Positions 4,040 to 57,664 of a stretch of DNA of 64,000 nucleotides are shown here, one piece after another; position 1 is the stretch's first letter, and each line of letters starts with the position of its first letter. The DNA comes from Macrostomum lignano (Eukaryota): positions 248,001 to 312,000 of the forward strand of contig NIVC01000317.1 in NCBI GenBank assembly GCA_002269645.1, written 5' to 3'. The notes under the pieces were generated by a model. The model did not search any database, was not told where the DNA came from, and saw nothing but the letters and a program-made list of their open reading frames with translations. Both the position numbers and the translations under genes were made by a program.

Positions 4040-4079
4040 TGGCGTCGCAAGTCTAAACTACCTATCCAGTCTGGCAAGA

Positions 4080-11040: not shown

Positions 11041-11057
11041 AAATATTAAAATAAAAA

Positions 11058-37200: not shown

Positions 37201-39800
37201 GACCGCGTGACTGGCGAAAGGGAGAAGCAGCAGAAGCGATACTTGTGTGACACCCTGAAGTCGCTGCATTGCAAGTACCTCACAGAGTTTCCTGGACGTC
37301 GCCAAATCAGCCTGTCTACATTTAGACGGTGGAAGCCGTTTGAGGAAGTGTGAATTGATTATCTTATATTGCTATCAATAATGTTAGATTCTGCATTTAA
37401 CATGCCATTTTACAACCTCCCATGCTTGGCACAGTCCCACGCCACTTAAGGGGCAAAAAGTCGGTCTTGTTCTTGATGTGTTTAGTGAGAAGACTAGCAA
37501 TCTAGCGCCCCCCTTCGGGGTGGCCAATAAGCAAGGGACGAATCCTTTAAAATGAAAAGAATTCTTAGGGAGGGGGGCTAGGAATCGAATTCTTATTTTA
37601 ATTCTGGGCTTATTTACAAGTCAAACATGCTTGTGCAGAATTTTATAACTGACAATTCAACCATACTTTGCTTCTTTCAGAGCAATAGCGTACTACTTTT
37701 ACAAGTACGCTCTGCAACGGCTGGAAAGCAGCAACAGCAAAAAATATTGTTAACCAATGTTACACAGTTGCCTATCATGCAGAGGCGTCATTGGCGTTGC
37801 ACCAAGTTTAATGATGTGTACGCTTAACTGTTTTAATGTTTGCATACAAACATGGGCGTCGGCTATTGTGACTGGAGCCAGTGGTTATTTGATAGTGGAT
37901 ATTGCCTGGTACAATGACTTACATTAATTGGTTCGACTTGCTTAAAGTTATTGTTTCCGTAATTTAGATTTTGTACTTTTGTACTTTTTTGCTACTCAAT
38001 TGCGAATATTTTCGCATAGCCTAATTTCCTTTTAGCTACAGTTCTTTCTTGCAGTTCTCACGTGCCCCAACCCTTTTCATCTTTATTCACTCACAGGGTA
38101 ATTAAAATGCAATTTTAATTTCACTAATAACTCAACTCTAGGAACTTGTAGTTTTCTAGCTGTTTTTCATTAAAGTTATTTTACGACTTTGCTTGACCTA
38201 TTTTGCATATCATGCAACTTTGAAATACATGGACTCACTCTGGTTAACTTATGCAATATATTTGTGCGACTCGTAGACTAAATTCGTCATCGATATCTTC
38301 AACTCCACTTGATTAATTCCTTAAGGCTTAACTGCGGAAACACGAGTGTGTGATTGATGTTAGATTTAAAATGTAAAAACGAACCCAGTTTTCTGTCTGT
38401 TTACAAAGTTGTTCGCTATGGTCTCTATGGATATGGACGCTATTATAGCTTTTTCTGGCATTGGGCCACTCTCACTCACTCATTACCCCAGATCATAGCG
38501 GTAGGCGGCATATGCCAGTGTGCATACATGTAGCATGTACTGTGCTTGGATTAAATTCGAGTTCGTTGCTGCCTGAGTGAGGAGGCTGGGTAAAAATTTT
38601 TCAACCAAACTTTTCTAGCCGCCTGACAAGACTGTACTGTCATGTAGCTACGCCTACCCATTCCCCCAGGCCGGGGGGACACGCCCGTGTACTTAGCAAT
38701 GTAGTGTCGGAATAACTTCTTCATTTGCGCCCCAGCCGGTGGAGAGGGGCGCAGTCATTGGCGGAAACTAATAGAACAAACATTTTACGCTCGTACTAAA
38801 TGTACTTAAAGTAAAACACTGCAACTTACAGCCACCATATTGATCACACGCCCAAACCTGCATTTAAAGTAATCCAACTTATATACTAAATACTAAATCT
38901 ATAACTAACTAACCAAAAATTAGAATGGCTGATAATAAATATTCAGTAAAATTTTCTACATTTTTAATGCAGAAGCAACTTTTTTAAAATGCTTTAGCTA
39001 CAGTCACAAATTAGGGCGCAGTCTCCCATTAATTAGTAACAAATAATCCTTTTCTCTGCGTACTCGAACAAAGAACAAGAACAACTCTGCACTGTAATTA
39101 CAAAAGCAAATTTATAAACCCAATCAACTGCAAGTAGTCCTTTTATTTATTCCGTATATTTACAATTTCAAAGTCATAAATTATTTACTCTGTATATTCA
39201 CAATTGCAAAGTCATAAAAGGATAAGAATTAAGATGTTTTTGCAGAAGGCTTCGCCAACAAGATGGCACCATTGCACAAATTCTGTTACGAAATTTTCAT
39301 TGGTGTCAATCTTACCACTTGTTGGCTTGCTTTAGTCTGCACAGCTGGACAGAGGCATTCACTTGGGGCATGTAAACTTCAGGGATTACTAATGAGCATG
39401 TAAGAAGAGTTTGCAACCCTCCTCTTTTTGCAACCGGGCTTGGGACCGGCTTCGGCAGAGTTAAAGCCATCACAACAGACTATCTGGGGTTTGCAAAGGC
39501 TGCTTCAAACCCCCTCTGGCTGCATTTGCATGTACGAGGGCCATTCCAAAAGTTCATGCAATCAGACATTTTCTCCCACTACAAAAGGCTGCTAATTTCA
39601 GCTTCTATCACCGCACTACCAGACTGTCTGTCCATACAATACATACAAGTAGATAGATACAATGCAACTCACTCTTGCAGGCGTACGTTTTGAAGGTCGC
39701 TTATTCCCGTATGGTTACACGCCCGTTCACTAACAGTCGGAACTTCATTGCTTCGATATATTGATCCCTTGGAGTCAACTGAAAGAGACACCTCCAAAGG

Positions 39801-42800
39801 TGTTGTGCTTTTGGCTTTAGCCTTTAGCAATTGTCAGTCTAGCGGTCTGTTGACCTCTGACGCGTCTATTATTTATTTCATAACTCAATAGCATGGTTCA
39901 ATTCATCAACGCAGTCGCGTAACAAAAATGTCTATGGCAAAGCCATCAACCCACAACACCCTCCCTCTTCTATAGGTAGGTGTACAATTATCACTCAGGT
40001 GCGATAAAAAATTCTAGTTTTCTTGGCCAAGCGTTTGCTTCGCCTGGGTGACGGCTTGGATTGAACTCCAACCTCAGTCTGTTGCTGTTGTGCTCTCTCA
40101 GCTTGTTCTGTTCCCGGTAGTATCTCAGTGTCTGTCGATGACGGACGCGTCTGTTGGCCGTCGTCACTTGGACTGCTGCCACCGGGCTTGGAATCCCCCA
40201 TTTCCGTAGTTCCGTGAGCCTCAGGTACCTCACCGATTCGTAGTTGATCGAGGTGGGTCTTTAGATTTCGTCCAGTCTCTGTGGTAACGACTGCTGTGTT
40301 GCTGCCAAGCATTTTGGCGAATCTCACAGTTCGTGGCTCATGAGAACTCGATGCACGGTAGATGAGTGATTCTCCTGGGATCCACTTGGACTGAGTGCTG
40401 CTCTCCGAGATGGGGAGTCTTATTTGTCTGCCGTTCAACAACTCGGACGGTGATGCTTGCTGCTTCCCCTTGGCAGCTCTGTAGAACAGTAGAAATCTGT
40501 CAATACTTCTTTGGGATAAACCATTGGTCTTGATTGTCTCTTTGACGGTTCGCACCATTCGCTCTGCAATGCCGTTGCTCTGTGGATGGTAGGCGGGCGT
40601 TGTGATGTGCGAACAGCCGGTCACCGCTTCGCTCACAAAACTAGGGCCGTTGTCTGACACGAGACACTTGGGCACCCCCTGTTGTGAGAACAATCTTCTA
40701 AGTCTGGAAATGACTGTGTCGGCCTTCATGTCGCTCGTGATGAAGACTTCCGGGTAGCTCGAGTGCGCATCCACAATGATGAGTAGGTACTTGCCCTCTA
40801 TCGGACCAGCAAAATCAATGTGCACTCGCTCCCAGGGGTTGTCAGGTTCTGGCCACGAGTGCCGAAAGTTCTTATTTCTGGACTTGTACGCGTTGCACAC
40901 GTTGCATCGTCCAATGTAGTCAGCGATGTCACGGTCCATCTGTGGCCACCAGAACTGTTCCCTCAAAATTGACTTTGACTTTTCCACCCCAAGGTGCGTT
41001 GAGTGTACAGCTGCCAGGGCAGTTTCTCTCAGGACACGAGGCAATACAATTCTGTTCATTCTGTAAATAATTCCATCATTGACAGTTAGCTCATCTTGAA
41101 CCTTCGAGTAGCTGAGTAGGTGTGGGTCGTCAAATAAATTATTGTTAATTATGGCTGCGCCCAGGCCATTTTGTTTCGGCGTCAGACAGAGTCTTGCTCA
41201 TGTACAGCACGACTTGACCGCTTTGTGTCAACACTCCGCCCAGAGCTCGCTGAGAACTGTCGCATTCCAGTTCAATGGGCTTCTCCGGATCAAATATTTG
41301 AAGACTCGATTGATCAGAGAGAGTGACCTTGATTTCGTCAAATGCTATTTGACACTCCTTTGTCCACACGAAGTCCTCATTTTTCTTTCTTAGTCGATTG
41401 AGAGGCTTGGTCAGTGCAGCTAGGTTTCTGATGAACTTGCCGCTAAAATTTACGAGACCCAGGAAAGATTCAAGCTCGCCAACGTTCTGCGGTGGTGTCA
41501 TGTCCTGGATTGCCTTCACTTTGGCTGGGTCCGGCTTGAGCTGATCTCCTTCCAATAAGTAGCCTAGAAACTTGATCGAAGTCTTGCGGAATTCACTTTT
41601 CGCCGTGTTGATCTTCAATCCTTGCTGGTTTAGTCGATGCAATACTTCCGTCTCACGAACTGCCAATTGTTCTACGCCTTTGCCGCATATCAATATGTCG
41701 TCTACGTAGGCAATGACGCCAGGAATTCCTTGTAGGACTTGGCTAATGTACCGCTGGAAGATCGCAGGTGCTGTTTTCACTCCGAACGGAAGCTTGTTGA
41801 AAGCGAACATCCCAAATGGTGTTGACATTACTGTCAGCTCTTTGGAAGCTTCATCTAGTGGGATCTGGTGATAAGCTTTCTCTAGGTCCAGACGAGTGTA
41901 TATCCGGCTGCCAGCAGCAGTTGCAATCACTTCGTCAGGTGCAGGCATCGGATATGAATCGTTGATAAGATGAGAATTGATTGTCACCTTGTAGTCGACG
42001 CAAAGTCTGAGCTTTCCAGAAGGTTTCTTGACCACGACAATTGGTGAGGCCCATTCACTGAACTTGACGGGCTTGATGGTGTCTTCTTCAAGCAACCGAT
42101 CGATTTCATCCTTGACTCCCTGTCTGAGTGCGAAGGGTAGCGGCCTGGGTTTGCAATGAATTGGAGTGGTTCCTTCCTTGATCTTAAGAGTTACTGGTGG
42201 AAATTCGCATGACTGGGTTGCCGATGTGCAGCTGTTGTCTACAGCGTTTAGCGTGAAATTGAGCTTGTCTCGGCCAACCAGAACAAAGTTCCTCTGCGAT
42301 TCCACAATGAAGAATGTGATTGGAATGAACTCGTCATTGTACTCCAACTCAGTGTCGTGTGTTCCAAAGACCTTCATCTGCGTATCAGCGTATGTTGTCA
42401 GAACAGTGTCTGTAGGTGTCAGCTTTGGACAACCCAATCGTTTCCAGATCGTTTTTTGACATTACCGAAACTCCTGCCCCAGTATCGATTTGTGCGTTCA
42501 CGCTAAGCATCGACCCGCTCGTGTGTCTGAGCCTAACAGGCACGGTGTAGCTATCAACGGGATGTCGAATGTGAAAACAATCCTCCTGTTCAGCTTCGCT
42601 TGCATCTACAAAGCTTGTGGTCCTTGGGCACACTGCAGCTCGCCTAAATTGACCAGATGCTGACGGGATTTTGAACGATTTTCGGCCTTTGCCAAAACCA
42701 GTTGATTTCGTTTTGCAAACTGTTGCGAAGTGGTTTTGCATGCCACATTTGTTGCACGTTTTTCCTTTCGCAGGACACCCTCCATTGGAGCCATGCATTG

Positions 42801-44414
42801 TGCCACATCTGCCACACTTGGAGCTTGTAGAGTGGGAGCCTCTGGCCACCGATGCTGAAATTTTCATTACTTCAGAAGACTGCGGCTGACTGGTGCAACC
42901 CTTTAGTATTTGCGTTTGTGATAGGTTTTGGTGCGCCTCAGCGATGTTGATAGCTGTCTCAAACGTGAGAGTGCTGAAGTCCTGTTCCAATAACTTGCTG
43001 ATGGCCACCTTGTCATTCAAACCGAATACGAGCTGATCTCTCAGTCTCTCATCTCTGGATAGGCCAAACTGACACTTGTCTGCCTGGATGCAGAGTTGCT
43101 GTGCATACTCACGAATGCTCATTGATGCCGTGCGAGTGATATGCTGGAAATTGAATCTCTCAGCCATGACGAACGTCTTTGGTTCCAGGATGCTGGCCAG
43201 TAGTTTGGTCAGTTCATCGAAGCTCTTTTCTCCCGGCTTCTTGGGAGCGGCTCGATCTGCCAATGCGTCGTACAGCTTGGTGCTGAGCTTCATCAGCAGC
43301 AGCTTGTTTTTCGTGTCGTCCTGCCAGCCGTTGAGTTCGCTGCACAGTGTGAATCGGTCCAACCACCTCTGGAAGTTCGAACTTTCATCGAGTTTTTCGA
43401 TGTCAACTTGCTGTCCTCTCGATACTTGTGCGCTTGGGTTCTGCGCTGTCGCTGTTGCCGACTTTGTCGCTTGGACTGATTTCGACGAGATCGCAAGCGG
43501 TGGTGCTTTGTCGCTCGAAACCGTTTTACCAACTCCTTTAGTTGGCGATGCTGGCGTACTTCCAGGCATTTTCGTAGCCTATGCTTGCCGACGCCACTGT
43601 TGTGCTTTTGGCTTTAGCCTTTAGCAATTGTCAGTCTAGCGGTCTGTTGACCTCTGACGCGTCTATTATACTTTTTTGCGATTGAATTCGTCCAAACTGC
43701 AAAACCTTTCGTCCACAAATGCTTTCTTAATGGGAGCTAAATTTAGATCATACCATAGACAACTGTGTTCACGCAAAACGGTTCATCCAGTTTGTAAAAC
43801 ATTTCGTCCCCTAGATTAGAGACCGACCAAGTGTACTGTTCCTACCATAGTTAACACCCAATTGACAGTTCGCTTTTGCTACCACTACAGCTACAGCAAC
43901 GCATATCTTCCATTCTGAGCCCGGCAAAACAGTCGAAGATGAACCGAGGCCTGGCGGATGCACATTTTGAAGAGAGAGGTCGAAGCTGCACTGCACGTGA
44001 TTACACAGGAGAAGTGCCAGCAATGGACCAATCACACTGTGGGTTACTACGGCCGCTGTTTGGACTACGAAGACATTTTGAACTAACATTCTAACAAGAG
44101 ACACTGTTTTTGCTTTGTTCAATATCTCGTGATATCAAATAAAGTCGCTCCGTTTAGCTGTTAGCTGTTTGGACGAAGGGTTTAGACGAAATGTTTTACA
44201 AACTGGATGAACCGTTTTGCGTGAACACAGTTGTCTATGGTATGATCTAAATTTAGCTCCCATTAAGAAAGCATTTGTGGACGAAAGGTTTTGCAGTTTG
44301 GACGAATTCAATCGCAAAAAAAGTATATTTATTTCATAACTCAATAGCATGGTTCAATTCATCAACGCAGTCGCGTAACAAAAATGTCTATGGCAAAGCC
44401 ATCAACCCACAACA
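39801..44414 (-). mobile_element. Ty3/Gypsy LTR retrotransposon C (young, internally deleted)
   Basis: Identical 158-bp LTRs (39801-39958; 43598-44414 minus the MITE); perfect TSD AAAGG; PBS TGGCGTCGGC; PPT AAGAGGGAGGG. gag-pro 43569-42385 (CCHC, IDTGAG), RT 42437-41145 (YVDD), integrase 41059-39995. Confidence 0.96.
43669..44325. mobile_element. Tc1/IS630-derived MITE in the 5' LTR of Gypsy C
   Basis: About 140-bp perfect TIRs (TACTTTTTTGCGATTGAATTC...), TA TSD; interior keeps a transposase C-terminal remnant HILKREVEAALHVITQEKCQQWTNHTVGYYGRCL. Confidence 0.93.
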
Positions 44415-45700
44415 AAAGGATTATTCGTGCTGTTGTATCTCGGATCCGAAGTCTTTACCATACCGCCGGCTATGCGAACAGCATCGGAAGTATTGCAACC
44501 TTCCCAAATAGACCGCAGGTCCTTGCCGAAAACGCTGACTCTCATCTCAGCCGAGTCGTCCACCAAGACGAATGAAAAAACTTCGCCTCGAACATCGTTC
44601 TTCATGTAGGACCTGATCTCCATCAACTCGGTTACAAGGCCAGTAACCGCTGCTGTATTCATGTAGCCCAGTTTCAGGCCAGAGATTTTAGCCTTAATTT
44701 TCTTGGTGATTGTAGACGCCATTGTTGCTAAGTTGTTCAGTTTAACAGCTTTAACAAAGTAGAAACAAAACTTAGAAAATAGAAAGAGCTTCTAGAAATG
44801 TTGCAGTGCAAAATACTTCAGTAGAAATAGCAGGTTAAAATCACAATTTGCAATACATTTTGATTTAAATAGTCAAGCCCACACCCCAATCACCAGCAGT
44901 CAACCCCACACGACTAAACAGCCAATCAGAATACAGATACCGCTCCCTCCCTGTGCAATCTCTTCGTTTTCAGACTAAATCGGCTGGGGTGGGTGGGGTC
45001 TAGATCTGACAATGGCGTGATCTCGCGAGGCTGATTGAACTGCCAGGGCCAACCCCTTCTCTGTGGGGGTTATCTGTGATTATCGTTTTTCACACTCAAA
45101 CGATGTGTCATTTAGTTAGTCTATTTAGTCAGAATTATTTGTGTTTACACTTTATTTTCCCTCCCTCTATCCAGTTCAGTCTTATTATTCTTCTCTCTCT
45201 ATGTACCCGCCGTCTGATTGGCTCTATAATCTCGCCTATCTTCTCAGTCGCACACTCTACACTCTACCACCCCTCCTAATTCTTACTTGCAATCAACCCC
45301 AACCCCGGAGTTTACAACTAAGTCTTTGGCATGACTAAGAGATTCGCGACAATGAAAAACTGCCGAGTATTGCTACTTACCAGCTCAAGCTGGTTTTGAC
45401 CCAACCTCTCCTGGTCCAGCTTGGCTTAATCCACCCACCCAACACAGTGCTCTCGCCCCTTCTCCCTGCCAGCGTGAGCTTTACCCCTCACCCCGCAATC
45501 CCCCGCATGGCTTAGCCCCAACCAATCCAGCCACTGCTGTCACTCTCTTGAGCTTAGCTCCACTTGTCTGCCCCACCCCTGCGTGGCCAACCCACCAACA
45601 CACCCCAAAACGTTTTGCTATAAATATATTCTCACTTTTTGCCCATTTTCTATTCGCTACTGAATTTCCTACTATTGCTACTACTATTCTGAAAGTTGAA

Positions 45701-46360
45701 ATGAAAGTTACCATCATCGAAGGCGGCCGGCCTCGACGCCGCCAGAACCAACCCCGTAGAAGTAAGTATCGTACATATTGTTACTACTTTTTCATTTCAC
45801 CTCTCTAGAAGTGTAGTGTAGAGTTTTATAAATACTGAACACTTACACAAACTTTCTTCTTTCTTGTTAACTCTTAGAAGCAAAAAACCCGTAGAGTTTT
45901 AAATACACAACGCGTACACACATTTGCTTCCTCTCTTTCTTCACTCTTTGAAGCAAACAAACCAATAGTACGAATCAATCTTAGTCGAACTATATATTGA
46001 ATTTAATTCTGGGCTAAAGTATAAATCAAACACGATTGTGTTAAATTAAAAAACTGACAATCACTATACACGCCTTCTTTCACAGAAATCGAATGCTACT
46101 TCTGCGGGGAAAACCACAGAGTGTCTCGCTGCGAGGCAGTGAAACAATACTACGCCCAACAGCGGCAGGAGCAGCAGGCACAGCAGCAGCAGGCACAGCA
46201 GCAGCAGGCACAGCAACAGCAGCAAACGGTGGAGCACGTTACCATCGAGTGCCCAGCTTTGGATAGCGCCAGACGAACACTCGGGATAACCAGCCTGAGC
46301 GCCCTCTGTAAGGACCCGGAAGCCGGCCGCCGGCTGTGGAACGCGTTTCAGCGACTGTAA
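45701..46360 (+). CDS. Two-exon Arg-rich/CCHC zinc-knuckle/polyQ protein, copy 1
   Basis: Exon 45701-45761 (MKVTIIEGGRPRRRQNQPRR, A|GTAAGT) splices in phase to CAG|46086-46360 (IECYFCGENHRVSRC...polyQ); 111 aa. Confidence 0.6.
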
Positions 46361-46605: not shown

Positions 46606-47419
46606 AAGCAGCGACAGCAGCAGCAGCAACAGCAGCAGGACAAACAATAATAGCATAGCATCCACCACAGTTGCAATCTAAAATAAACATTTGCTGCCAG
46701 AAATTGCTGCCTTTTTTGAAATTTGCTGAACAGTGTGCTTTCTGAGCTTTCTCTTTTGAATTAGTGTAGAGGCGCAGTCATTGGCGGAAACTATATAGAA
46801 CAAATTAAATCTTACTACATGTACTTACAGTAAAACACTGCAACCTGGAACTACCATATTGATGACGCACACAAACCTGTACATTTAAAGTAATTTAACT
46901 AACCAAAATATCAGAATGGCTGACAATAAATATACAGTAAACTTTTCTGCTTAAACTTCACACAAAGCAATTTTTAAAAATTATACAGTGTCCCAAAAAT
47001 TAGGTACGTAATAAGAGAGCAGTTCCGATTGATTAATCCTTTTCTCTGCGTATTCAGACAAAAAACAAGAAACTCTATTACAAACAATTTTTGTAGGACC
47101 TAATTGCATCTTTCGTCTTGATTAAAAGAATCACTGCTTCGAAAGTAGTAGAATCACTACTACTACTACCTACTTACTACTACTACTACTACTACTACTA
47201 TGTCATGTTATGTTTATTACATTATTATGACTCATCAATTTGTTAGGCAAGTCAGTACCAGTCTCTATTAAAGTGAACAATATGGCTACGAAATCAAGTA
47301 TTGTGCTATGCTTCCACACTCAACGCTGTTAATTTATTTACTCTGTATTTACAATTGCAAAAAGTCATAAAAGAATAAGAATCGAGATGTTTCTGCAGAA
47401 GGCCTCGGCAACAAGAATG

Positions 47420-48040
47420 CATCTTAGAATGCACTGTAGAAGAGATTCTTAGAATGCACTGTAGAAGGGATTCTTAGAATACAAAGTAGAATAGATTCTT
47501 AGAATAGAAAAGTAGAAGACATTCTTAGAATAGAAAGTAGAAAAGATTCTTAGAATACAAAGTAGAAGAGATTCTTTGAATGCAAAGTAGAAGACATTCT
47601 TAGAATACAAAGTAGAATTCATTTTAAGAATACAAAGTAGAAGAGATTTTTAAAATGCAAAAGTAGAAGAGATTCTTAGAATAGAAAGTAGAAGAGATTT
47701 TTAGAATACAAAGTAGAAGTCATTCTTAGAATACAAAGTAGAAGACATTCTTCGAATACAAAGTAGAAGACATTTTTAGAGTACAAAGTAGAAGACATTC
47801 TTAGAATACAAAGTATAATAATTCATTCTAAGAATACAAAGTAGAATTCATTTTAGGAATACAAAGTAGAAGACATTCTTCGAATAGAAAGTAGAAGACA
47901 TTCTTCGAATACAAAGTAGAAGAGATTCTTATAATACAAAGTAGAAGATATTCTTCGAATAGAAAGTAGAAAATATTCTTAGAATACAAAGTAGAAGAGA
48001 TTCTTAGAATACAAAGTAGAAGAGATTCTTAGAATAGATT
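47420..48040. repeat. 25-bp minisatellite (~25 copies)
   Basis: Unit ATTCTTAGAATACAAAGTAGAAGAC; period checked at 47701/47726. Confidence 0.95.
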
Positions 48041-48329
48041 TATATATTCAAAATTCACACCAAGTCAATTGAGTTAAAGTCACACGAAGCAGTTATGACA
48101 TAATCAATTTCTTAGGCAAGCCAGTACCAGTCTCTATTAAAGTTAGCAATATGGTTACGCAATATAAATCAAGTGTTGTGCTATGCTTCCACACTGCGTT
48201 TTCAATACTGTGACGCAATTCAATTCAGTGTCAAAATTCAGCCAGTACACAGACGATAAATAAAAAGCCTATTGTGATGATGCAATCGATTTCAGAATCA
48301 GAATTCAACCAGTCAGTTTTTTCTCTAGC

Positions 48330-48595
48330 ATTCTTAAAATGCATTTCAAGTCGAAAAGTTTGCTTGACCTTTGCAAAAAAGCATGTTTTTCGAATATTTA
48401 ATCCCTTTAGCATTTAGCAATTTCTTAGCCAAGATACATGTACCGTCCCGGGAAAATTTCTGATCGAATGGTGCAAGTTTGAACAAAATCGGTTGAGCCA
48501 TTCGGGAGATAATCGATTGCGCACAAGCAAACATACATACAAACAACTCATTTTTAGTATATGGACTAGCCATTTAGCCCCCCGCTGGGGGGCAT
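48330..48595 (+). mobile_element. Helitron/HINE-like non-autonomous 3' end
   Basis: AAAATCGGTTGAGCCATTC, (ACAT)n, TAGTATA, then hairpin GCCCCCC-GCT-GGGGGGC (48577-48593); related ends at 51470-51690 and 59745-59930 [(GACA)n + TTAGAGATTTAGTATAG]. Confidence 0.5.
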
Positions 48596-49074
48596 TAAAA
48601 TGACACCAAGTGGTTTTGATTTTGGCCCAACAGTAAACCATTAATTTCCCTTTCCATTAATCAAAAATTACTTTTTCTCATTCTGAAAAAATAAATTGCC
48701 ATGAATCAAAACTTTCACCAGCAAAAAAGTTTCCTTAATCAGCCCAAAACCCGTTTTCAATCAGCAAATAGTGCTTATCCTTTCAAGCACAAACTCTTAG
48801 AGCATATCGTCATTGGCCTGGGCATATTTTGGTCCGCAGCAGGAGCTCAATATGCAAATCCCTGACGGCCTTTGACACCCCTCTTTATTAGCCTAACTCA
48901 AAGAATCAAACCTTTAAAAAATACGCTGGTATTTCCTATCAGCAGAATTCAGCATCACTTGTGTGTACTATTTCATTATCTGAATTAAATGAGCTACTTG
49001 AGCTGTACTACTTGACGATATGACAATCGAACAACAAACCTAACCCCCTCCCCCCAAAAATTCAGCCATCCCCA

Positions 49075-49620
49075 TGAGCCTTGACATCTCAGCAATTCCC
49101 CCAGTAGGCCTTGACATCTCAGAAATTCCCTCAGTAAGCATCGACATTGCAGCAATTAAACTCGAGCCTTGACATCTACGCAATTCTCTCAGGCCAGTAA
49201 GCCTTGACATCTACGCAATTCTCCCAGGCCAGTAAGCCTTGACATCTCAGCAATTCCCCGAGTAAGCCTTGAAATCTCAGAAATTCCCACAGTAAGCCTT
49301 GAAATCTCAGCAATTCCCCTAGTAAGTCTTGAAATCTCAGAAATTCCCACAGTAAGCCTTGACATCTCAGCAATTACCCCAGCAAGCCTCGACATCTCAG
49401 CAATTACCCCAGTAAGCCTTGACATCTCAGCAATCCCCCAGTAAGCCTTGACATCTCAGCAATTCTTCTAAGAAGCTTTGACATCTCAAGAATTTTCCCA
49501 GTAAGCCTTGAAATCTGAGCAATTCCCATGAGCCTTGAAATCTCAGAAATTACCCCAAAAAAGCCATGACATCTCAGCAATTCAACCAATAAGCCTTGAA
49601 ATCTCAGCAATTCCTGAGAT
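49075..49620. repeat. 30-bp minisatellite (~18 copies)
   Basis: Unit CAGTAAGCCTTGACATCTCAGCAATTCCCC; degenerate copies at 50160-50335. Confidence 0.95.
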
Positions 49621-51049
49621 GTCTCCACAACAACCTGAAATTATCCCTTCAAATCCCAAAAAAACAGACTGCAGTCATACTCTAGCGGCATAGAATTGTT
49701 CCCACAGCAAACAATAATTTACTCAGCAGTCCACAGTAGTCCACAGTTACCACCTGAGCAGTTTGCAGCTATACGCTCATAAGTCTGGAGCAAAGATAAA
49801 AAAGCAAAGAATATGGTCTGGAGGAGCTCCGTCTGCACATCTCACATCTTTAAATCTATGAAATGATCCTCCAGACCAGACAAAATGATCTATATGTCTG
49901 GAGGAACTACCTTAGCAGTTTGCAGTTTGTCCCCTTTGCAGTCTGCAATGATCCTTTTGACAATCTGCAGTTCTTCTGTCGGCCGGCTCCTCAGTCTCCT
50001 GCTTAGCAAACTGCAATGATATTTTCAACAATAAAAAATTGCTAACAGTTTAGTAACGACTCATCAATCAATTTTCGATACATACCGGCAGTTTTTTGCA
50101 CAAATCAGCATTAAGCAATACCTTCATTCCTAAATAGCAAGCATCCCCCAAAAGAAAGCAATCGCAGCATCTCCCCCCGTCAACCTTGTAATCTCAGCAC
50201 TTCCCCCCATAAGCCTTTGAAACCTCAATTCAAGCGATTCGTCCAGTAAGCCATGGCATATCAGCAATTCCCCATGGGCTTTTAAAGTCAAAAATTGCCC
50301 CAAAAACCCATGACATCGCAGCAATTCCTGAGATATGCCCACAACAACCTGAAATTATCCCTTCTAATCCCACAAAACAGACTGCAGTCATTATCTTAGC
50401 AGCCTGGAGTTATCCCCTTGCAGTCTATAACTTTCATTAACATTAAGCATTTATCCCCTCAGCAGCCTAGAACTGTCCCGTCAGCAAACCACAATAATTC
50501 ACTCAGCAGTCCACAGTAATCCCCTAAACAACCTGCACTTAATCACTTAAACTGTACAGTTTTGAAACTGATGTCTTGCTATCCTATCTTCTCTGAGAGT
50601 TGTCTTGCTCAGAAGTCTATCAATCCTCCAAGCAGCCCCCCTCAGCAGTTTTCAGTTTGTCCCCTTTGCAGTCTGCAGTTCTCCTCTCGGCCGGCTCCTC
50701 AGTATCCTTAGCAAACTGAAATAAAGGATCCTTTTAAGAATCTGATTTTTTTCTCAGCATTTATTACGATTCACTAATAAATTTTCGATACATATCGGCA
50801 GTTTTTTTCACAATTCAGCCTTCATTTTAACAATAAATTTAGCAGTTTAGCAATTTGATACTTTCATGGAGCTAGGCAATACCCATTGATGCGATGAGTA
50901 ATACGCGAAGCAGTTTTTTACAAATCAAATTTGCTTAGTAAATTAGCAAAATTTTTTCATGAAGTGTGCCTTGTGAATTCAACAAAAATATTCCTATTAG
51001 TTGAGCCCGAAGTTATATATAAATGAATAAATAAATTTAATTTTAATCA

Positions 51050-51130
51050 TCCGCCGAGGAGTCAGACTCGAACCTTGGACCTTACGCCTAGCCTAAACCT
51101 AGTCCTAGTGCCTACACTGCGGCTATTCCG
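51050..51130 (-). other. tRNA-derived SINE-like head
   Basis: Minus strand GGCGGAATAGCCGCAGTGT (A-box-like) ... GGTTCGAGTC (B box); no clean cloverleaf. Confidence 0.35.
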
Positions 51131-51999
51131 CCTACTGATGGGAGGGCGCAAAAATCAGCTATATATGCTTCTGCACTGCAGTCAAATACATAGCAGTGAT
51201 AGGCTGCTCAGTGTGCACAGGTTGTGTGCAGTCAGAGCCAATGCACAAATAAGTGAAATCTATAAATAGCAATTGTCTATGCAGTCCACCCGTCAGCCAG
51301 GGTCAGAATGTACACACGCAGCCACTGAGCATTATTTTCCTCTCCCTTATTGCAGCCAGTATTGAGGCGTACACAGTGAACAGAGAAAATTTGTGGCGCA
51401 ATCTTAATTGGAATTGAAATTCAGTTAGTGAGATTTTGACCTTTTCTAGCCTCCCATTGAAAGCATTAAAAAACTCGTTTTTCGAATATTTAACCAACTT
51501 CTCATTCGAATTTTTCAATGCAATTACACCCACACAATTTCACAAGAATTTGCAATTGAATGAAGCAAGTTTGAAAAAATCGGTTCAGGCATTCAGGCTG
51601 TGGACTGGAATACCGGTCAGACAGACCTTAGAGATTTATAGTATATTGTGATGATGGACTGGCAATCAACGCCCCCCGTTGGGGAGCAAACGAAATGCAA
51701 TACAGGTTTTTTATATGCAACATGTAGCTAAACCTTGAAATCTTAAAAAATCTCCTGTCAAACTTCTAACCATAACCCCAACCCTAACGATAACCCTAAA
51801 TTTAATATTTTGTTCACGAGTTTTTGCATGATGCTTGCATTATTTTTTGCATGACGCTTCCATAAACATTTTTAATAGGCTACATGAGCTAAGTTATAAG
51901 CTACCCTAACCCTAGCCATAAGCCAAATCTTAACGCTATACCCTGAACCTAACACTAAACCTTGAAACCCTAACACCAACCCTAACACTAACCCTGCAG

Positions 52000-52850
52000 C
52001 CTGACATTTGCATAAGTTTGTGAAGCGCTTATGCACCAAATTTTTGTGAACAGAATATTCTCAGTGACATGAAATATTTGAAGCTTTATTTATTTCCGCC
52101 ATAGCACATCACTACAAAGAACGTGCATATACGAGTACCATTTAATACTTGCATACTTGAGTGTAGGATGATACAAAACTGCGTGAATAAATTGGCCGAA
52201 CTATTAAACATTTCTGTTAGTTTCACGATTATTATACACAGTACATGTGCAAAGTACTGTTCAACTGTACTGTTACGAACTACAACAAACAAAAAACAAC
52301 AAACGGTACGTGCTTTTATTTAAATTTTAAACAACCGAAAATTGACATTCAGCAGTTAAAACAATATTTAAACCAACACATGTATTTTTTCAAATGATAT
52401 GATATGATCTTCTGCTGCTAATACGAGCGTATCAGATGAAAATTTGCAATAATGTAATAATTTATAACAAAAGGATCGACTGTCGCTTCAGCAGATGGTA
52501 CCATCGACAAGCAGCCAGTATAGCTTTAGCGGTACAAAAATGTACATGTATATGCCATCCTGACTACCTGCCGACTCGCGTCACTGCTCAATTGCATGCA
52601 TTGGGTGTAAGCAAATGTAGAGACATTCATTCTCAAACCAAACATTAAGTCGCTCCGCTCTGCTTAAGGCTGCTACAGAGCTTGACTGCAAATGCTCCTT
52701 TTAGAGTCTGGAACCACAGGGTATATAGAGCAGCTCCTATACACCATTCACAAACTCTTTTAGCCCAGTTAAGATGCAGTCAACCTACTCTCAATGAGGG
52801 CTGCTTCATAAACCCAATTATACATACATGTTTGACCTGCTTATACCTGT
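52000..52850 (+). repeat. Direct repeat, copy 1 (paired with 56385-57660)
   Basis: 52455-52840 is nearly identical to 57290-57660; upstream blocks are similar but partly shuffled; TAACCC-rich segments at 51765-51995 and 56560-56590. Confidence 0.9.
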
Positions 52851-53222
52851 ACTATTTCTGTTTACTGACTGTATTTTATGGTCTGTTCAGTGACTGTATT
52901 AGTGACTGTATTATTGTCTGTTTAGAGACTGTATTGTCTGTTTAGAGGCTGTATTGTCTGTTTAGAGGCTGTAGTGCCTGTTTAGGGATTGCATCATTGT
53001 CTGTTAAAAGACTGTATTTATTGTGTAATTTCTACCTTAAGTACTCCTATATTTATGTCCTATGAGTATAAGGAGGAACTTATGAAACATTCCTCGTGAA
53101 TAGGATTTACTCAATGCACTCTCTCAGGGCTATCAGTTCATTGAGACTCTACGCGACTTTGATTTCACTCTCAGCCATCAGACGCTCGGGTCAAAAAAGT
53201 GGCACGCGCCAACTGTGGCAAC

Positions 53223-54956
53223 TCACTGATACGAAGTGCTGTTCTGTACGCTGTGATCATCGAACGCCATTCTGCTCGACTCATCCTGACCGTCGACACC
53301 TCCACTACGGTGAAACTGACTCCGGTCATCACCCGTCGACACTCGTCTGTATCGAATCTGCGAGAAGAAAAAATTTATAAGGATATAAAATATGTGTAAC
53401 AAGAAAGTCCTATTAAGCATGAATACATAAAAGCAACACAATAAGTACTGTTCTCTTTGCTATTCAATTTGCGATTTTCAAAATAATTAGCTTAACTGAA
53501 CACCTGTCTAACAACTTTATTATATTTAATCTAAATATACTAAATCTTAATCAACTAAATTTGTAGAAAATCACTCACCTTTTTGCCATTTCCGAAGTCC
53601 CTCACAATTTCCTTCGAGTGTTTGTCATAAAATTCAAACAAGGCAGCAGGCTCCCGAATGGTGGTCACACTTTCGTCTCCAATCTCATCAGCACCAAGTC
53701 CTGGAGTAGGCACTGGAGCGGGCACAGGTTCAAACCGGGTATCCTTTGCATTCCTATACCAGTCAGCCAAGACTCTGGCTTCACCATCGTCACTGTTGCA
53801 TTTTACGTCAGAGTTCGAGCATCCCAACGTGACGGAGCCCGAATACTCCTGCACCTTTGCTCTTCTTATGGACAAAACATCGCCGATGTTCCACCTGTCC
53901 ACTTGAGCTGAGGACGAACCCCAAAACGTGCAGCTTACAGAACCGAAGGTTCGGTCAACCAAAGTCACTTTGGCTACGTTAACCTTTTTCCCAGCACGCG
54001 TTTGTACTTCTTCAGACGGTTGCCTGGCGTCGATCACTCCAAGCACATCGACGATTCTGATAGTGAAAGGGAGCAATACTTTTTTTAACTATTTGCACAC
54101 TAACTTAAGCATCACATTAGATTTCTATGTACATGTAACACGCGGTATTTGGGAGCACCAAAAACACGAAGGCCCCGTGAGGCAGTGATCGCTTTATTTA
54201 TGCAAGTTGAAGTTAAGCCTGCGATGTACATAGAGAGCGAACGTACATTAAATCAATACGATGATTCAGCTAATTATTTGTCACGATTGCTAACAGTTTA
54301 GACTGCCTCTAAGGCAAGGAATAAAATATTACATAAACTAACAGGAGCATCATGAAGCTAATAACCCAGGCTTCGTACAGTGTTGCGATGATAAATATTT
54401 TCAAACACAAGACAAACTAACTGTCACCCAAAAACACGATTACATGTGCTTTCACTCCGCGATATTTGAGCACTAATACATGACGAAAACTTCTAAATCA
54501 ATTAGTCACTCACCTGTCCAATCCAGTCTGTTGCAGTTGATTAATTCTAGTGTAATTAATTACTGGATCTCGAGCAACCGGCACTTCGTTGCTTCTATAG
54601 ATGAAGCCCTTGGAATCCACGGAAACGGTCATCTCAAGTGGATTGTCCGTACACTTGTACTCCGGCTTGGCAGTCTTCACCATCCCGCCGGATATGCGAA
54701 CGGCTTCAGCATCGTTGCATACTTCCCAGACAGCTTGCAAATCCTTACCGAAGACGCTGACTCGCATCTCAGATGAGTCGTCCACCAAGATGAACGAAAA
54801 CACTTGGCCCTGACCTTTGTTGTTATTATACGTGTGAACGTCTTTCAGGTTCGTCACAAGGCCAGTGACAGGCGTAGGCATTTGACCAACTGTCAGACCG
54901 GCAATCCCATCCTTCTTCGACTTCTTTTTTAAAGGTGACTCTGAATAAGAGGCCAT
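53223..54956 (-). CDS. RPA70-like two-OB-fold ssDNA-binding protein, copy 2 (3 exons, ~351 aa, apparently intact)
   Basis: Exons 54956-54514, 54056-53579 and 53357-53223 with GT-AG sites in matching phases (2, 0). Motifs GQGQVFSFILVDDSSEMRVSVF and RIVDVLGVI...VTLVDRTFGSVSCTFWG...IRRAKVQEYSGSVTL resemble RPA70 DBD-A and DBD-B. Confidence 0.8.
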
Positions 54957-55774
54957 TTTGCACAAAATATTATTCAACAATTAAAAAAATAACTGATAAA
55001 AAGTATCAATCAAACTTTTTCTAAGCAATGATAAGCTTTGATTTTAAGACACCAAAATTGGCTCAACAAATCACAAACTATATATGTAGAAATAAAAGTA
55101 GCCACGAAAAAACACTACCTCCCCTCCAGCCCAGTACATTGTACTCAATTTCGCATTCATTTTTACTTTATTACACAATCTAATTGGCTGGACACACAAC
55201 CCACCCCAATCACTCCAGTGCCCAGCATTAAAGCACACACTGCACCCTCTGCTGTACGCTAAGGTCTCCTCACTTTTCTCACTTAATCCTTTTGTTTGTT
55301 TGCTATCTCGTTTTATAGTGACACAATTCTCACCGACTGACTCAGCAAGTGTAGGCAATACTTTAGGAGTTCGCGGCCGCGTGTACTTCACTGCACAAAC
55401 AAAACTTGTATGGCGCGGCTGACTGGTTGAGCCATTTTCGCACCTTCTAAGCCGGGAAAAAAAGACAGGCGACCCTCCTCAAGTCAGGCTGCATGGCCAC
55501 CAGTACGCTAGACAATTTGTAGACCAATCGCCGATCTAAAGCCCCGAACTGCACACCCTCGCCTGCACAACCGACCAATAGGAAGCCACAGAAAACCAAC
55601 CTAAGGCTCAGCGAAGCCACACTCTCCACAGCAAACTGATACAACTGCTGAAGCGACGACTCACAACCCATAACCCCTATTTTATTCGCCCCTACACCTC
55701 AGTTTCAGTGCCTATATATATAAAAAATACGCTCATTAAGTATATTAGATATATTTAGACTGCTAATTTAGACT

Positions 55775-55991
55775 ATGCAAATAACTCAAATATTCGGTGG
55801 CGGTCGGCGCGGCGGCGGTCAGCGCGGCAGGGGCGGCCCACGTGGAAAAAGCAGTGAGTACCATCCCAAGACACTGTAAATCTTGAGCTTTGAGTACATT
55901 CGAGTAGTCTTAAATTGTCGTTTGTTTCTTCTGCGGAGGCCGCCACCGCGTTGCCAGCTGCATCGCCATGAAGGCCGCCGCCCGCCAATTG

Positions 55992-56023
<32 letters not shown>

Positions 56024-56261
56024 GCCACCACAACAACAACAACAGCAGCAGCCACCACAGCATCAGCCACCACAGCAGCAGCCACTACAGCAGCAGCCAC
56101 CACAGCAGCAGCCACTACAGCAGCCACCACAGCACCAGCAACAGCAGCAGCCAACAGCAACAGCAACAGCAGCAGCCACCACAGCAACAGCAACAGCAGC
56201 AGCCACCACAGCAACAGCAACAGCAGCAGCCACCCCAGCAGCAATTCGAGCGAATGACTGA
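55775..56261 (+). CDS. RGG/CCHC zinc-knuckle/polyQ protein, copy 2 (splice acceptor not found)
   Basis: Exon 55775-55853 MQITQIFGGGRRGGGQRGRGGPRGKS ends A|GTGAGT (phase 1, as in copy 1); downstream VCFFCGGRHRVASC plus a long Q tract; no in-phase AG seen. Confidence 0.45.
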
Positions 56262-56384
56262 ATAAATTTACTCAATAAATATACTCAATATACTCTCTTC
56301 TTTCACATTTTTTGACTTTTGATTAAAATACGTGATTGACTTACTTAATTTCTCGGACTTTTGAAACGCTGACGCACCGGTACA

Positions 56385-57660: not shown

Positions 57661-57664
57661 TTAT

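What the first reader, a model, noticed from the sequence alone, without database searches (positions are those of the whole stretch)
38745..56261. Duplicated head-to-head cassette: RPA70-like OB-fold gene plus Arg/RGG-CCHC-polyQ gene
Seen twice in the same layout. A minus-strand OB-fold gene (starts 44722 and 54956, same phase-2 intron) diverges about 0.8-1 kb from a small plus-strand gene (starts 45701 and 55775) whose Arg/Gly-rich exon ends in phase 1, followed by CxxCxxxHxxxxC and a polyQ tract. A shared AT-rich block lies downstream of each OB gene (38745-39270 vs 46768-47420). The copies are clearly diverged yet keep their motifs. Known: Helitrons can carry RPA70-like genes; CCHC/RGG proteins bind single-stranded nucleic acid. 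Inference: a two-gene ssDNA/RNA-binding module, either cargo of a rolling-circle element or a lineage-specific expanded family. I do not recognise this pairing.
Basis: partly seen in the sequence, partly recalled or inferred. Interest (0 to 1): 0.7.

Follow-up and report, generated by a model that had tools for sequence, protein, structure and literature searches.

The report
Helitron transposons carrying an RPA-like/zinc-knuckle gene pair
The two "cassettes" are the cargo of two neighbouring rolling-circle transposons (Helitrons) in the flatworm Macrostomum lignano. Each carries a single-stranded-DNA-binding gene derived from RPA70 and, transcribed the other way, a small zinc-knuckle gene; I found no earlier description of that second gene in Helitrons.

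Summary
The window is Macrostomum lignano contig NIVC01000317.1. Both cassettes exist, but they lie inside a head-to-tail array of three Helitrons on the minus strand:
- C, 59941..51659, carries cassette 2.
- A, 51658..48566, has no genes.
- B, 48565..37494, carries cassette 1.

None of the three encodes RepHel.

The OB protein is an RPA70 DBD-A+DBD-B tandem (PDB 1JMC, E=9e-27). All four aromatic DNA-stacking positions are kept, and it lacks DBD-F and DBD-C.

At every paralogous locus examined except one Helitron family, the OB gene sits 0.8-1.0 kb head-to-head with a small two-exon knuckle gene. That gene has a conserved phase-1 intron just before the first Cys. One 14.4-kb Helitron family carries RepHel, OB and knuckle gene between a single pair of termini. 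Another carries RepHel and OB only.

Both genes show purifying selection (omega about 0.2-0.45).

Cassette 1 is dead: an LTR retrotransposon splits OB exon 1, and exons 2-3 are deleted. In cassette 2 the OB gene is intact, but the knuckle is 1 nt out of frame.

RPA-like Helitron genes are known; the paired knuckle gene appears to be new.

The parts
51659..59941 (-). Helitron C, non-autonomous (no RepHel), carrying cassette 2
   Evidence: 5' end reads TCCATCCTCCACCTATACTAAATC...(GTCT)n...GAATGCCTCAAC and aligns with the 5' ends of Helitrons A, B, Y and type iv. 3' end is the hairpin CCCCAACGGGGGG followed by CGTTGATTGCCAG, i.e. CTAG mutated to CCAG, abutting the 5' TC of Helitron A. No other Helitron hairpin lies between 51684 and 64000. 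Its layout is colinear with B. Its 5' flank is G rather than A.
54514..54956 (-). OB gene 2, exon 1 (DBD-A-like OB fold; ends in phase 2)
   Evidence: ATG at 54956, donor AG|GTGAGT at 54514/54513. 59% identical to P0001.
53579..54056 (-). OB gene 2, exon 2 (DBD-B-like OB fold)
   Evidence: Acceptor tcag|A at 54057/54056, donor AAG|GTGAGT at 53579/53578. Pfam REPA_OB_2, E=1.8e-13.
53223..53357 (-). OB gene 2, exon 3 (acidic/Ser-rich tail, with stop codon). The complete model is 351 aa with no internal stops.
   Evidence: Acceptor cgcag|ATT at 53358/53357. Homologous to the C-terminus of P0001.
54957..55774 (.). 819-bp divergent intergenic region of cassette 2, presumed to be a bidirectional promoter
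   Evidence: Lies between the two ATGs. Promoter function is inferred, not tested.
55775..55853 (+). Small gene 2, exon 1 (MQITQIFGGGRRGGGQRGRGGPRGKS; ends in phase 1)
55908..56261 (+). Small gene 2, exon 2. The knuckle CFFCGGRHRVASC (55923-55961) and the polyQ/P tract are 1 nt out of frame with exon 1 through the only canonical acceptor.
   Evidence: This is either a real frameshift or a homopolymer error (A3 run 55912-14) in a PacBio/Pilon assembly (PMC5730564).
52299..52845 (.). Direct repeat R1 flanking cassette 2; its partner R2 is at 57124-57665
   Evidence: 94% identity over 549 bp.
57124..57665 (.). Direct repeat R2 flanking cassette 2. It is followed by a 23-bp satellite at 57670-58274 and a 19-bp array at 58679-59373.
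48566..51658 (-). Helitron A: gene-less, largely tandem repeats, sitting between C and B in the head-to-tail array
   Evidence: 3' end is ...GCCCCCCAGCGGGGGGCTAAATGGCTAG|TC at 48566. 5' end is TCCATCATCACAATATACTATAAATC at 51658.
37494..48565 (-). Helitron B, non-autonomous, carrying cassette 1
   Evidence: 5' end is 88% identical over 41 nt to the 5' end of the RepHel-encoding type iv Helitron. The 3' hairpin+CTAG|T is identical at L005 (4066) and L006 (17752), with different outside flanks. A possible older internal 3' end lies near 38645 (hairpin at 38663).
45701..46650 (+). Small gene 1 (GenBank BOX15_Mlig001744g2 = P0011). Exon 1 is 45701-45761 (phase 1). Exon 2 starts at 46086 and encodes KIECYFCGENHRVSRC plus polyQ. 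A 193-bp insertion at 46222-46415 interrupts the polyQ tract.
   Evidence: The GenBank annotation is built from transcripts (PMC5730564).
44415..44722 (-). OB gene 1, first part of exon 1
   Evidence: 94% identical to P0001 residues 1-104.
39673..39800 (-). OB gene 1, remainder of exon 1 up to the phase-2 donor. Exons 2-3 are missing because of a 2.26-kb deletion whose junction is at 39623-39633.
39801..44414 (-). Ty3/gypsy-type LTR retrotransposon inserted into OB gene 1 exon 1. The target duplication AAAGG is at 39796-39800 and 44415-44419.
   Evidence: gag, protease, RT, RNase H and integrase domains. L004 shows the empty site. The shared 89 nt of the LTRs are 100% identical.
38745..39270 (.). 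AT-rich block 1, the direct-repeat partner of 46768-47420; the two flank cassette 1 inside Helitron B
46768..47420 (.). AT-rich block 2, followed by a 25-bp x 24 tandem array at 47422-48036

Best explanation
The OB gene and the small knuckle gene form a two-gene accessory module of a Macrostomum lignano Helitron lineage. In the window the module occurs twice because two module-carrying, RepHel-less ('semi-autonomous') Helitrons, C and B, sit in a head-to-tail array C-A-B on the minus strand.

SHOWN
- The termini of the three elements, and the sharing of the B-type 3' end (hairpin plus CTAG|T) between loci with different outside flanks.
- The presence of the same module between the ends of a RepHel-encoding Helitron.
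- The RPA70 DBD-A/B nature of the OB protein, with aromatic residues kept at all four DNA-stacking positions.
- Conserved gene structure and purifying selection on both genes.

INFERRED
- The two genes are co-expressed from the 0.8-1.0 kb divergent intergenic region.
- The RPA-like protein cannot enter the RPA trimer because it lacks DBD-C, so it would coat the single strand that RepHel peels off during rolling-circle transposition.
- The small basic knuckle protein, with its RGG/RS/polyQ low-complexity tails, would act as a nucleic-acid chaperone or adaptor on that strand or on the terminal hairpin.
- B and C would be mobilised in trans by RepHel from relatives with matching ends. B's hairpin and 5' end resemble type iv; C's hairpin resembles the Y type.

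The window copies are decaying. B's OB gene is destroyed. C's terminal CTAG is mutated to CCAG, and its knuckle is out of frame.
For: ORGANISM AND LOCUS
- The window is NIVC01000317.1 (100% identical over 21 kb).

HELITRON ENDS
- the type iv Helitron runs from A|TCTAATATAC... to ...CCCCGAAGGGGGGTCAACTATTGCTAG|T. The 3' end is identical in L002, L008 and L010 (L009 has one C and one G fewer in the hairpin); the 5' end is identical in L002, L008 and L009 (L010 begins inside the element).
- the same B-type 3' end occurs at three loci with unrelated flanks, and B's 5' end is homologous to the type iv 5' end.
- the ends of C and A.
- B and C have colinear architecture.
- L004 lacks 51397-59762, as expected from unequal exchange between the homologous 5' regions of A and C.

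THE MODULE INSIDE A RepHel-ENCODING HELITRON (Y type, L001 6418-20797)
- RepHel, OB and the small gene lie between one pair of ends with no internal hairpin.
- The same unit is 99.8% identical over 14.6 kb in L011. In L012 the 3' end is the same but the flank is different.

LINKAGE
- The two genes sit head-to-head 0.87-0.98 kb apart at L004-L006 and L001, and the small gene's pieces lie upstream of the OB gene on the opposite strand at L007, L011 and L012.
- All rebuilt small-gene models (L001, L004-L006, both window copies) have a phase-1 intron 2-3 codons before the first Cys.

OB PROTEIN
- Matches 1JMC at E=8.7e-27. About 2500 representative-library proteins score E<=0.001; most of the listed top hits are about 600 aa and match at about residues 180-430, as RPA70 DBD-A/B does, and the few looked up by name were RPA70-like.
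- F69, Y100, W193 and Y219 are invariant in the family and align with RPA70 F238, F269, W361 and F386. The role of those residues comes from my knowledge of 1JMC.

SELECTION
- OB: omega 0.45-0.47 at dS 0.15; about 0.2 between the B type and copy 2; 1 or more between near-identical copies (1.3 and 1.7, on 8 and 13 differences).
- Small gene: omega 0.26 over 46 codons.

PRECEDENT
- A rice Helitron (the Mothra mother element) encodes RPA but no RepHel (PMC4683698).
Against: - No experiment or expression data was available for either window copy of the OB gene or for small gene 2. Neither OB copy 2 nor small gene 2 is in the GenBank annotation, though that annotation excludes transcripts that overlap repeats.
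- C is known from a single copy. Its 3' CTAG is mutated and its 5' flank is G, not A.
- The module's orientation relative to the Helitron ends differs between Y and B/C. A captured passenger could also show this.
- Pfam does not recognise the knuckle, and the window copies have CX2CX3HX4C spacing, so zinc binding is unproven.
- The omega values are moderate, and dS is saturated for the deep comparisons.
- I could not search the whole M. lignano genome, so copies of the pair outside Helitrons cannot be excluded.
Confidence: 0.8

Rival explanations
1. The pair is a host gene family that expanded by whole-genome or segmental duplication in a neopolyploid genome. On this view the Helitron ends nearby are incidental in a TE-rich region.
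For: The assembly contains 180 Mb of non-repetitive blocks that are at least 95% identical (PMC5730564). L004 and the window share sequence beyond the Helitron junctions at 93-99% identity, so that particular pair of loci is a duplicated or allelic segment. The window is packed with unrelated TEs.
Against: B-type copies in the window, L005 and L006 stop matching at exactly the CTAG of a Helitron 3' end and have unrelated flanks beyond it. Y-type copies behave the same way. Every OB-family locus examined (13) lies within or next to Helitron structures, and in the type iv family the OB gene follows RepHel by 545 bp (548 in L010) at four loci.
Confidence: 0.07
2. The pair is a host gene pair captured by Helitrons as a passenger, which Helitrons often do. 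It would have no role in transposition, and any constraint would reflect a host function or recent capture.
For: Helitrons are known for capturing genes (PMC6431247). The module is inverted between the Y type and B/C. In B and C it is bracketed by internal direct repeats, which could be scars of acquisition.
Against: The OB gene is present in at least four diverged Helitron lineages (B, C, Y and type iv), and omega is about 0.2 over saturated dS. The phase-2 intron position is kept in all of them. RPA-like genes are recurrent Helitron accessory genes in plants, cnidarians and fish. Captured fragments normally decay.
Confidence: 0.1
3. The small 'gene' is not a functional partner. It would be a low-complexity ORF, or a non-coding transcript driven by the OB promoter, that happens to contain a Cys/His pattern.
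For: Pfam finds no zf-CCHC domain. The spacing in the window copies is non-canonical. Most of the protein is polyQ, RGG, RS or PY repeats that differ entirely between families. Copy 2 is out of frame.
Against: All four Cys/His positions, the phase-1 intron 2-3 codons upstream and the basic stretch before it are kept in six diverged versions, including the Y type, which has canonical CX2CX4HX4C spacing. Omega is 0.26 at pS 0.64. The gene is annotated from transcripts at several loci (Mlig001744g1, g2 and g5; also L012 8720-9067).
Confidence: 0.1

Closest known systems
Rice DHH_Mothra 'mother element' and its autonomous sister family (Roffler, Menardo and Wicker 2015, PMC4683698)
   Same: Both are Helitrons that encode an RPA-like ssDNA-binding protein but no RepHel. 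Both have termini like those of a RepHel-encoding sister family, contain blocks of tandem repeats, and coexist with autonomous and fully non-autonomous relatives.
   Different: This case is in a flatworm rather than a plant. The OB protein has only DBD-A and DBD-B (about 350 aa). There is a second, divergently transcribed knuckle gene. The elements sit in head-to-tail arrays.
[quoted passage not shown]
   Same: An RPA70-derived OB protein is carried by a RepHel Helitron. The type iv family here has the classical RepHel-then-RPA order on one strand.
   Different: I found no description for Platyhelminthes in the searched library. The family's best matches outside Macrostomum were a trematode multi-OB protein and generic RPA70s. 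This fits an independent acquisition, but no phylogeny was made.
RPA70 (human RPA1; PDB 1JMC, 8RK2)
   Same: Tandem DBD-A/DBD-B OB folds. Aromatic residues are kept at the positions of F238, F269, W361 and F386.
   Different: There is no N-terminal DBD-F and no C-terminal DBD-C/zinc ribbon, so trimer formation with RPA32/RPA14 is not expected. It has a short acidic/Ser-rich tail instead.
Retroviral/retrotransposon nucleocapsid-type CCHC zinc knuckles (Pfam PF00098)
   Same: A small, basic protein with a single Cys-X2-Cys...His-X4-Cys motif next to Arg-rich stretches. The Y-type version has the canonical CX2CX4HX4C spacing.
   Different: It is not part of a Gag protein. The window copies have CX2CX3HX4C spacing. 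The Pfam model does not score. The rest of the protein is polyQ, RGG or RS low-complexity sequence.

Membership tests
Helitron (rolling-circle DNA transposon) | 5' terminus begins with TC | tested here: met
   B begins TCCATATACTAAAAATG at 48565, C begins TCCATCCTCC... at 59941, and A begins TCCATCATC... at 51658. All three align with the 5' ends of the RepHel-encoding copies.
Helitron (rolling-circle DNA transposon) | 3' terminus CTRR preceded within about 10-15 nt by a short GC-rich hairpin | tested here: met
   B ends CCCCGAAGGGGGGCGCTAGATTGCTAG at 37494. A ends ...GGGGGGCTAAATGGCTAG at 48566. C has the same hairpin but ends CCAG, one substitution away.
Helitron (rolling-circle DNA transposon) | Insertion between A and T without target-site duplication; copies have identical ends and different flanks | tested here: met
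   CTAG|T is seen in all copies. A|TC is seen for type iv in L002. The same B-type 3' end occurs in the window, L005 and L006 with unrelated flanks, and the Y-type 3' end behaves likewise in L012 vs L001. The 5' ends of B and A abut the preceding Helitron because they are in a tandem array. C's 5' flank is G.
Helitron (rolling-circle DNA transposon) | Encodes a RepHel protein (required only for autonomous members) | tested here: not met
   tblastn finds no RepHel anywhere in the 64-kb window, so B, A and C are non-autonomous. RepHel is present in the related Y and type iv elements.
RPA70 / Replication protein A large subunit | Tandem DBD-A and DBD-B OB folds | tested here: met
   Profile vs PDB gives 1JMC at E=8.7e-27 over profile positions 9-245 and 8RK2 residues 180-417. 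Pfam REPA_OB_2 scores E=1.8e-13. About 2500 representative-library proteins score E<=0.001, the listed top hits mostly about 600 aa matched at about 180-430.
RPA70 / Replication protein A large subunit | N-terminal DBD-F and C-terminal DBD-C with zinc ribbon (the trimerisation core) | tested here: not met
   The protein is 351 aa, DBD-A starts about 20 residues from the N-terminus, and the 100-aa tail has no Pfam match. It is an RPA70 derivative, not an RPA70 orthologue.
RPA70 / Replication protein A large subunit | Aromatic residues that stack on ssDNA (human F238, F269, W361, F386) | tested here: met
   These positions align with F69, Y100, W193 and Y219, which are invariant in the four family members aligned. 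The role of the residues is taken from knowledge of 1JMC. Binding itself was not tested.
zf-CCHC zinc knuckle (PF00098) | CX2CX4HX4C spacing | tested here: not met
   Both window copies and L004-L006 have CX2CX3HX4C. Only the Y-type small protein (L001) has the canonical CX2CX4HX4C.
zf-CCHC zinc knuckle (PF00098) | Significant match to the Pfam profile | tested here: not met
   None of four versions gave a zf-CCHC hit at E<=0.05. The domain is only 18 residues long, so this is weak negative evidence.
zf-CCHC zinc knuckle (PF00098) | Zinc coordination and nucleic-acid binding | not testable with these tools
   This needs recombinant protein.

The most novel reading that the evidence does not exclude
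Helitrons of this flatworm lineage encode a dedicated two-protein system for handling single-stranded DNA: an RPA70 DBD-A/B derivative plus a knuckle/low-complexity chaperone, expressed from a bidirectional promoter. The system would be needed for, or would strongly boost, rolling-circle transposition, and it can be supplied by RepHel-less 'semi-autonomous' elements. That would be the first Helitron accessory-gene pair, and a three-tier parasitic hierarchy (RepHel+module, module only, neither) in an animal.
Probability: 0.3. Interest if true: 0.65.

Novelty: new variant of a known kind. Interest (0 to 1): 0.5.

Why it matters
How eukaryotic Helitrons handle the long single strand they peel off is still poorly understood, and the role of their RPA-like genes has never been tested biochemically.

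This lineage offers one genome that contains all of the following:
- RepHel+OB+knuckle elements.
- RepHel+OB elements.
- Elements with the module only.
- Elements with no genes.

It therefore forms a natural series for asking which proteins are needed in cis or in trans. The host is also a flatworm in which transgenesis works (PMC5730564).

On the practical side, the OB and knuckle genes are currently annotated as ordinary host genes ("Replication protein A OB domain-containing protein", "hypothetical protein"). They should be flagged as TE-borne in M. lignano gene sets, including stem-cell and germline expression studies.

Tried and rejected
- DNA-level comparison of the two cassettes found only 170 bp of OB exon 1 plus the AT-rich block, so it is not a recent tandem duplication.
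- I first read the 8.4 kb missing from L004 (51397-59762) as an insertion of a mobile unit with its own ends. Its borders are not Helitron ends. It is better explained by unequal exchange between the homologous 5' regions of Helitrons A and C.
- I first took the Helitron 3' end at 48566 to be the end of the element carrying cassette 2. A further 3'/5' junction at 51659/51658 showed that a separate gene-less element (A) lies in between.
- The left end of L001/L007 colinearity (L001 7552) is not a Helitron terminus. The real Y-type 3' end is at L001 6418 and is confirmed by L011 and L012.
- A fuzzy-regex search for termini timed out and was replaced by blastn-short and plain regexes.
- P0001 could not be located on a contig.
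- Gene identifiers (Mlig001744 and others) occur in no paper of the library. No paper links Macrostomum Helitrons with RPA.
- Searching homologues of small protein 1 returned only its own cluster.
- The tail TVEHVTIECPALDSARR... encoded by the 193-bp insert has no relative in the window or in the fetched loci. Its resemblance to non-LTR ORF2 C-termini is from memory only.
- The third protein-database search was left unused. A query of about 20 residues of knuckle plus low-complexity sequence would not have been informative.

Full report
**Where the window comes from**

A protein built from the second OB gene found only Macrostomum lignano relatives, at 41-57% identity. The first OB copy is 91-94% identical to some of them. 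The annotated protein P0011 led to locus L003. L003 is 100% identical to window 35596-56650, so the window is contig NIVC01000317.1 of assembly Mlig_3_7, positions 248001-312000.

That assembly is PacBio/Canu polished with Pilon. Its GenBank annotation is transcript-based and leaves out transcripts that overlap repeats (PMC5730564).

Cassette 2:
- The OB gene is an intact three-exon gene on the minus strand: 54956-54514, 54056-53579 and 53357-53223. It encodes 351 aa, with a phase-2 first intron.
- The small gene starts 819 bp away at 55775. Its 79-nt RGG exon ends in phase 1.
- The only canonical acceptor (AG at 55906-07) puts the knuckle CFFCGGRHRVASC one base out of frame. A TAA at 55911-13 blocks every other route. 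One A fewer in the run 55912-14 would give ...GKS-ILIVVCFFCGGRHRVASC-polyQ.
- I cannot tell whether this is a real frameshift or a residual homopolymer error.

Cassette 1:
- The small gene (45701-45761, then from 46086) is the annotated gene BOX15_Mlig001744g2.
- It carries a 193-bp insertion in its polyQ tract (46222-46415) that the paralogues lack. The GenBank model treats the insertion as an intron.
- The OB gene is a wreck. Exon 1 is split by a 4614-bp Ty3/gypsy-type LTR retrotransposon (39801-44414, 5-bp duplication AAAGG; L004 shows the empty site).
- After the preserved phase-2 donor at 39673, a 2.26-kb deletion (junction 39623-39633) has removed exons 2 and 3.

The "shared AT-rich block" is real (69-87% identity). 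However, both copies flank cassette 1. Cassette 2 is flanked by a different direct repeat, 52299-52845 / 57124-57665, at 94%.

**What the OB protein is**

- Pfam finds REPA_OB_2 in exon 2 (E=1.8e-13) and a weak OB hit in exon 1.
- A profile of four family members matches human RPA70 DBD-A/B (PDB 1JMC) at E=8.7e-27, and full-length RPA70 at residues 180-417.
- Against 1.84 billion representative proteins the profile finds about 2500 hits. Most of the listed top hits are about 600 aa and match at about 180-430; the few looked up by name were RPA70-like.
- The four aromatic positions that stack on ssDNA in 1JMC (F238, F269, W361, F386; from my knowledge of that structure) align with F69, Y100, W193 and Y219. 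These are invariant in the family.
- There is no DBD-F and no DBD-C.
- So the protein is an RPA70-derived, stand-alone DBD-A/B protein. It is probably an ssDNA binder that cannot join the RPA trimer.

**Linkage at other loci**

I fetched eleven further loci besides L003 through annotated paralogues. They fall into three families.

B-type copies (L004, L005, L006):
- Each has an intact three-exon OB gene, 95-98% identical to P0001.
- It lies head-to-head with the small gene, with the two ATGs 870-977 bp apart at L004 and L005; L006 has the same layout in reverse.

Y-type loci (L001, L007, L011, L012):
- The OB protein is only 44-49% identical to the window copies.
- A small two-exon gene again lies upstream on the opposite strand; at L001 it starts 919 bp from the OB ATG. 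At L007, L011 and L012 only its pieces were mapped by tblastn.
- Its first exon is PY-rich and polyQ. Its second exon encodes GLCRFCLRRGHIAAEC followed by an RS repeat.

Type iv loci (L002, L008, L009, L010):
- These have the OB gene but no knuckle gene.

In all six rebuilt small-gene models (L001, L004-L006, both window copies), the intron is phase 1 and lies 2-3 codons before the first Cys.

**The Helitron context**

Type iv:
- The OB gene starts 545 bp (548 in L010) after the end of a RepHel reading frame on the same strand.
- The copies stop matching at A|TCTAATATAC... on one side and at ...CTCTCCCCGAAGGGGGGTCAACTATTGCTAG|T on the other. This is a textbook Helitron.

Helitron B:
- Window, L005 and L006 stop matching at the same point. 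Read on the minus strand, that point is ...CCACCCCGAAGGGGGGCGCTAGATTGCTAG|T. The flanks beyond it are unrelated.
- This is a Helitron 3' end at window 37494.
- The matching 5' end (TCCATATACTAAAAATGAGTTGTTTG...) is 88% identical over 41 nt to the type iv 5' end. It lies at 48565, directly after the CTAG of another Helitron.
- Helitron B is therefore 48565..37494 and contains the whole of cassette 1.

Helitrons A and C:
- A further junction...CCCCAACGGGGGGCGTTGATTGCCAG|TCCATCATC..., lies at 51659/51658.
- A 5' end that aligns with the others lies at 59941.
- No other Helitron hairpin occurs up to 64000.
- This defines a gene-less Helitron A (51658..48566) and Helitron C (59941..51659), which contains cassette 2.

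Shared architecture and partners:
- B and C share the same order of parts: 5' end, 5' region, a 23-25-bp tandem array, a roughly 0.6-kb block, the small gene (antisense), the OB gene (sense), the block again, and the 3' hairpin.
- The window contains no RepHel.
- L004 is otherwise colinear with the window at 93-99% but lacks 51397-59762. These borders lie at homologous points of the 5' regions of A and C, which suggests unequal exchange in the array.

Y type:
- This family shows that the module is not a chance passenger of defective elements.
- L001 6418-20797 (minus strand) runs from TCCTATATACTAAAAATG... to ...CCCCCAACGGGGGGCGAAGATTGCTAG.
- It contains RepHel, the OB gene (antisense) and the small gene (sense), with no internal hairpin.
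- L011 is 99.8% identical over 14.6 kb but has a different Helitron upstream. L012 has the same 3' end followed by a different flank.

**Selection**

| Comparison | Result |
|---|---|
| OB gene, B-type copies that differ moderately | dS 0.15, dN 0.065-0.07, omega 0.45-0.47 (31.5 synonymous and 49.5 non-synonymous changes) |
| OB gene, B type vs window copy 2 | dS saturated (1.4-1.9), omega about 0.2 |
| OB gene, near-identical copies | omega 1.3 and 1.7, based on only 8 and 13 differences |
| Small gene, first 46 codons, L004 vs L006 | pS 0.64, pN 0.29, omega 0.26 |

For the first comparison, about 19 synonymous and 62 non-synonymous changes would be expected under neutrality (my arithmetic from the site counts). 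The overall pattern is what one expects of genes that matter for active transposon lineages and decay after insertion.

**Mechanism (inferred)**

- Helitron transposition peels off one strand and passes through a circular intermediate (summarised in PMC6431247). An ssDNA-binding accessory protein is the usual reading of Helitron RPA-like genes (PMC4683698).
- I propose that the DBD-A/B protein coats that strand.
- I propose that the small basic knuckle protein acts as a chaperone or adaptor, and that both genes are expressed from the shared intergenic region.
- B and C would depend on RepHel from relatives with matching ends.
- None of this was tested.

**Comparison with what is known**

- The closest described case is the rice Mothra mother element. 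It encodes RPA but no RepHel, contains tandem-repeat blocks and has a RepHel-bearing sister family (PMC4683698).
- RPA-like genes are reported for plant, cnidarian and fish Helitrons (PMC6431247).
- I found nothing on flatworm Helitron RPAs, or on a knuckle gene paired with a Helitron RPA, in the searched library. That library is not exhaustive, and Repbase was not available.
- I therefore rate this a new variant of a known kind.

**Limits**

- I could not search the whole M. lignano genome.
- C is a single copy with a mutated terminal tetranucleotide.
- The knuckle fails the Pfam test.
- The functional model is inference.

Noticed in passing
window about 10066-22214 (+ and - strands): Maverick/Polinton-like element. 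ORFs carry an rve integrase (10066-10818), a protein-primed DNA_pol_B_2 plus an Endonuclease_7 motif (12599-14257), a weak Pox_A32-type ATPase hit (17696-18190, minus strand) and a double jelly-roll-like domain (20221-21330).
   Followed up: partly
window 1813-8184 (+): A second LTR retrotransposon: gag with two zinc knuckles (4730-4828), RT/RNase H (5126-6433) and integrase (6958-8184).
   Followed up: partly
window 25365-25868 (+), 32164-32721 (-), 35202-35870 (+): Fragments of a DDE_3 (Tc1/mariner-type) transposase, a piggyBac-type DDE_Tnp_1_7 transposase and a LINE endonuclease (Exo_endo_phos_2). The whole window is TE-dense.
   Followed up: partly
window 39801-44414: In the LTR retrotransposon inside OB gene 1, the two LTRs share only their outer 89 nt (39870-39958 and 44326-44414, 100% identical). 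A 143-bp inverted repeat (43667-43808 vs 44185-44327, 99.3%) abuts the right LTR, so the 5' LTR appears rearranged.
   Followed up: partly
window 51760-52000 and 56565-56590: Degenerate telomere-like (TTAGGG)n stretches inside Helitron C, within segments that are themselves repeated (51693-51851 vs 56495-56640).
   Followed up: no
window 38745-39270/46768-47420 and 52299-52845/57124-57665: In both module-carrying Helitrons the two-gene module is bracketed by a direct repeat. B's repeat and C's repeat are unrelated to each other, although the elements are otherwise colinear. The Y-type element has no such repeat. This is unexplained; possibilities are homogenisation within each element or scars of acquisition.
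   Followed up: partly
L005 vs L006 (OB gene and small gene): The OB genes are almost identical (dS 0.009), but the adjacent small genes are strongly diverged (L006 vs L004, pS 0.64). B-type Helitrons are therefore mosaics of different lineages.
   Followed up: partly
L004 15030-20364: A 5.3-kb Helitron made largely of the same 23-bp satellite as window 57670-58274. It is inserted at the position corresponding to window 51165 (between A and T) and is absent from the window.
   Followed up: partly
window 46222-46415: A 193-bp insertion in the polyQ tract of small gene 1. If read through, it ends the protein with TVEHVTIECPALDSARRTLGITSLSALCKDPEAGRRLWNAFQRL. From memory this recalls the C-terminal Cys/His motif of non-LTR retrotransposon ORF2. 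No relative was found in the sequences held.
   Followed up: partly
protein P0035 (Calicophoron daubneyi, CAL8082275.1): A 4022-aa predicted protein of a trematode with 26 matched stretches to the OB-family profile (E=8e-265). It may be a fused gene model across an array of RPA-like OB genes in another flatworm.
   Followed up: no
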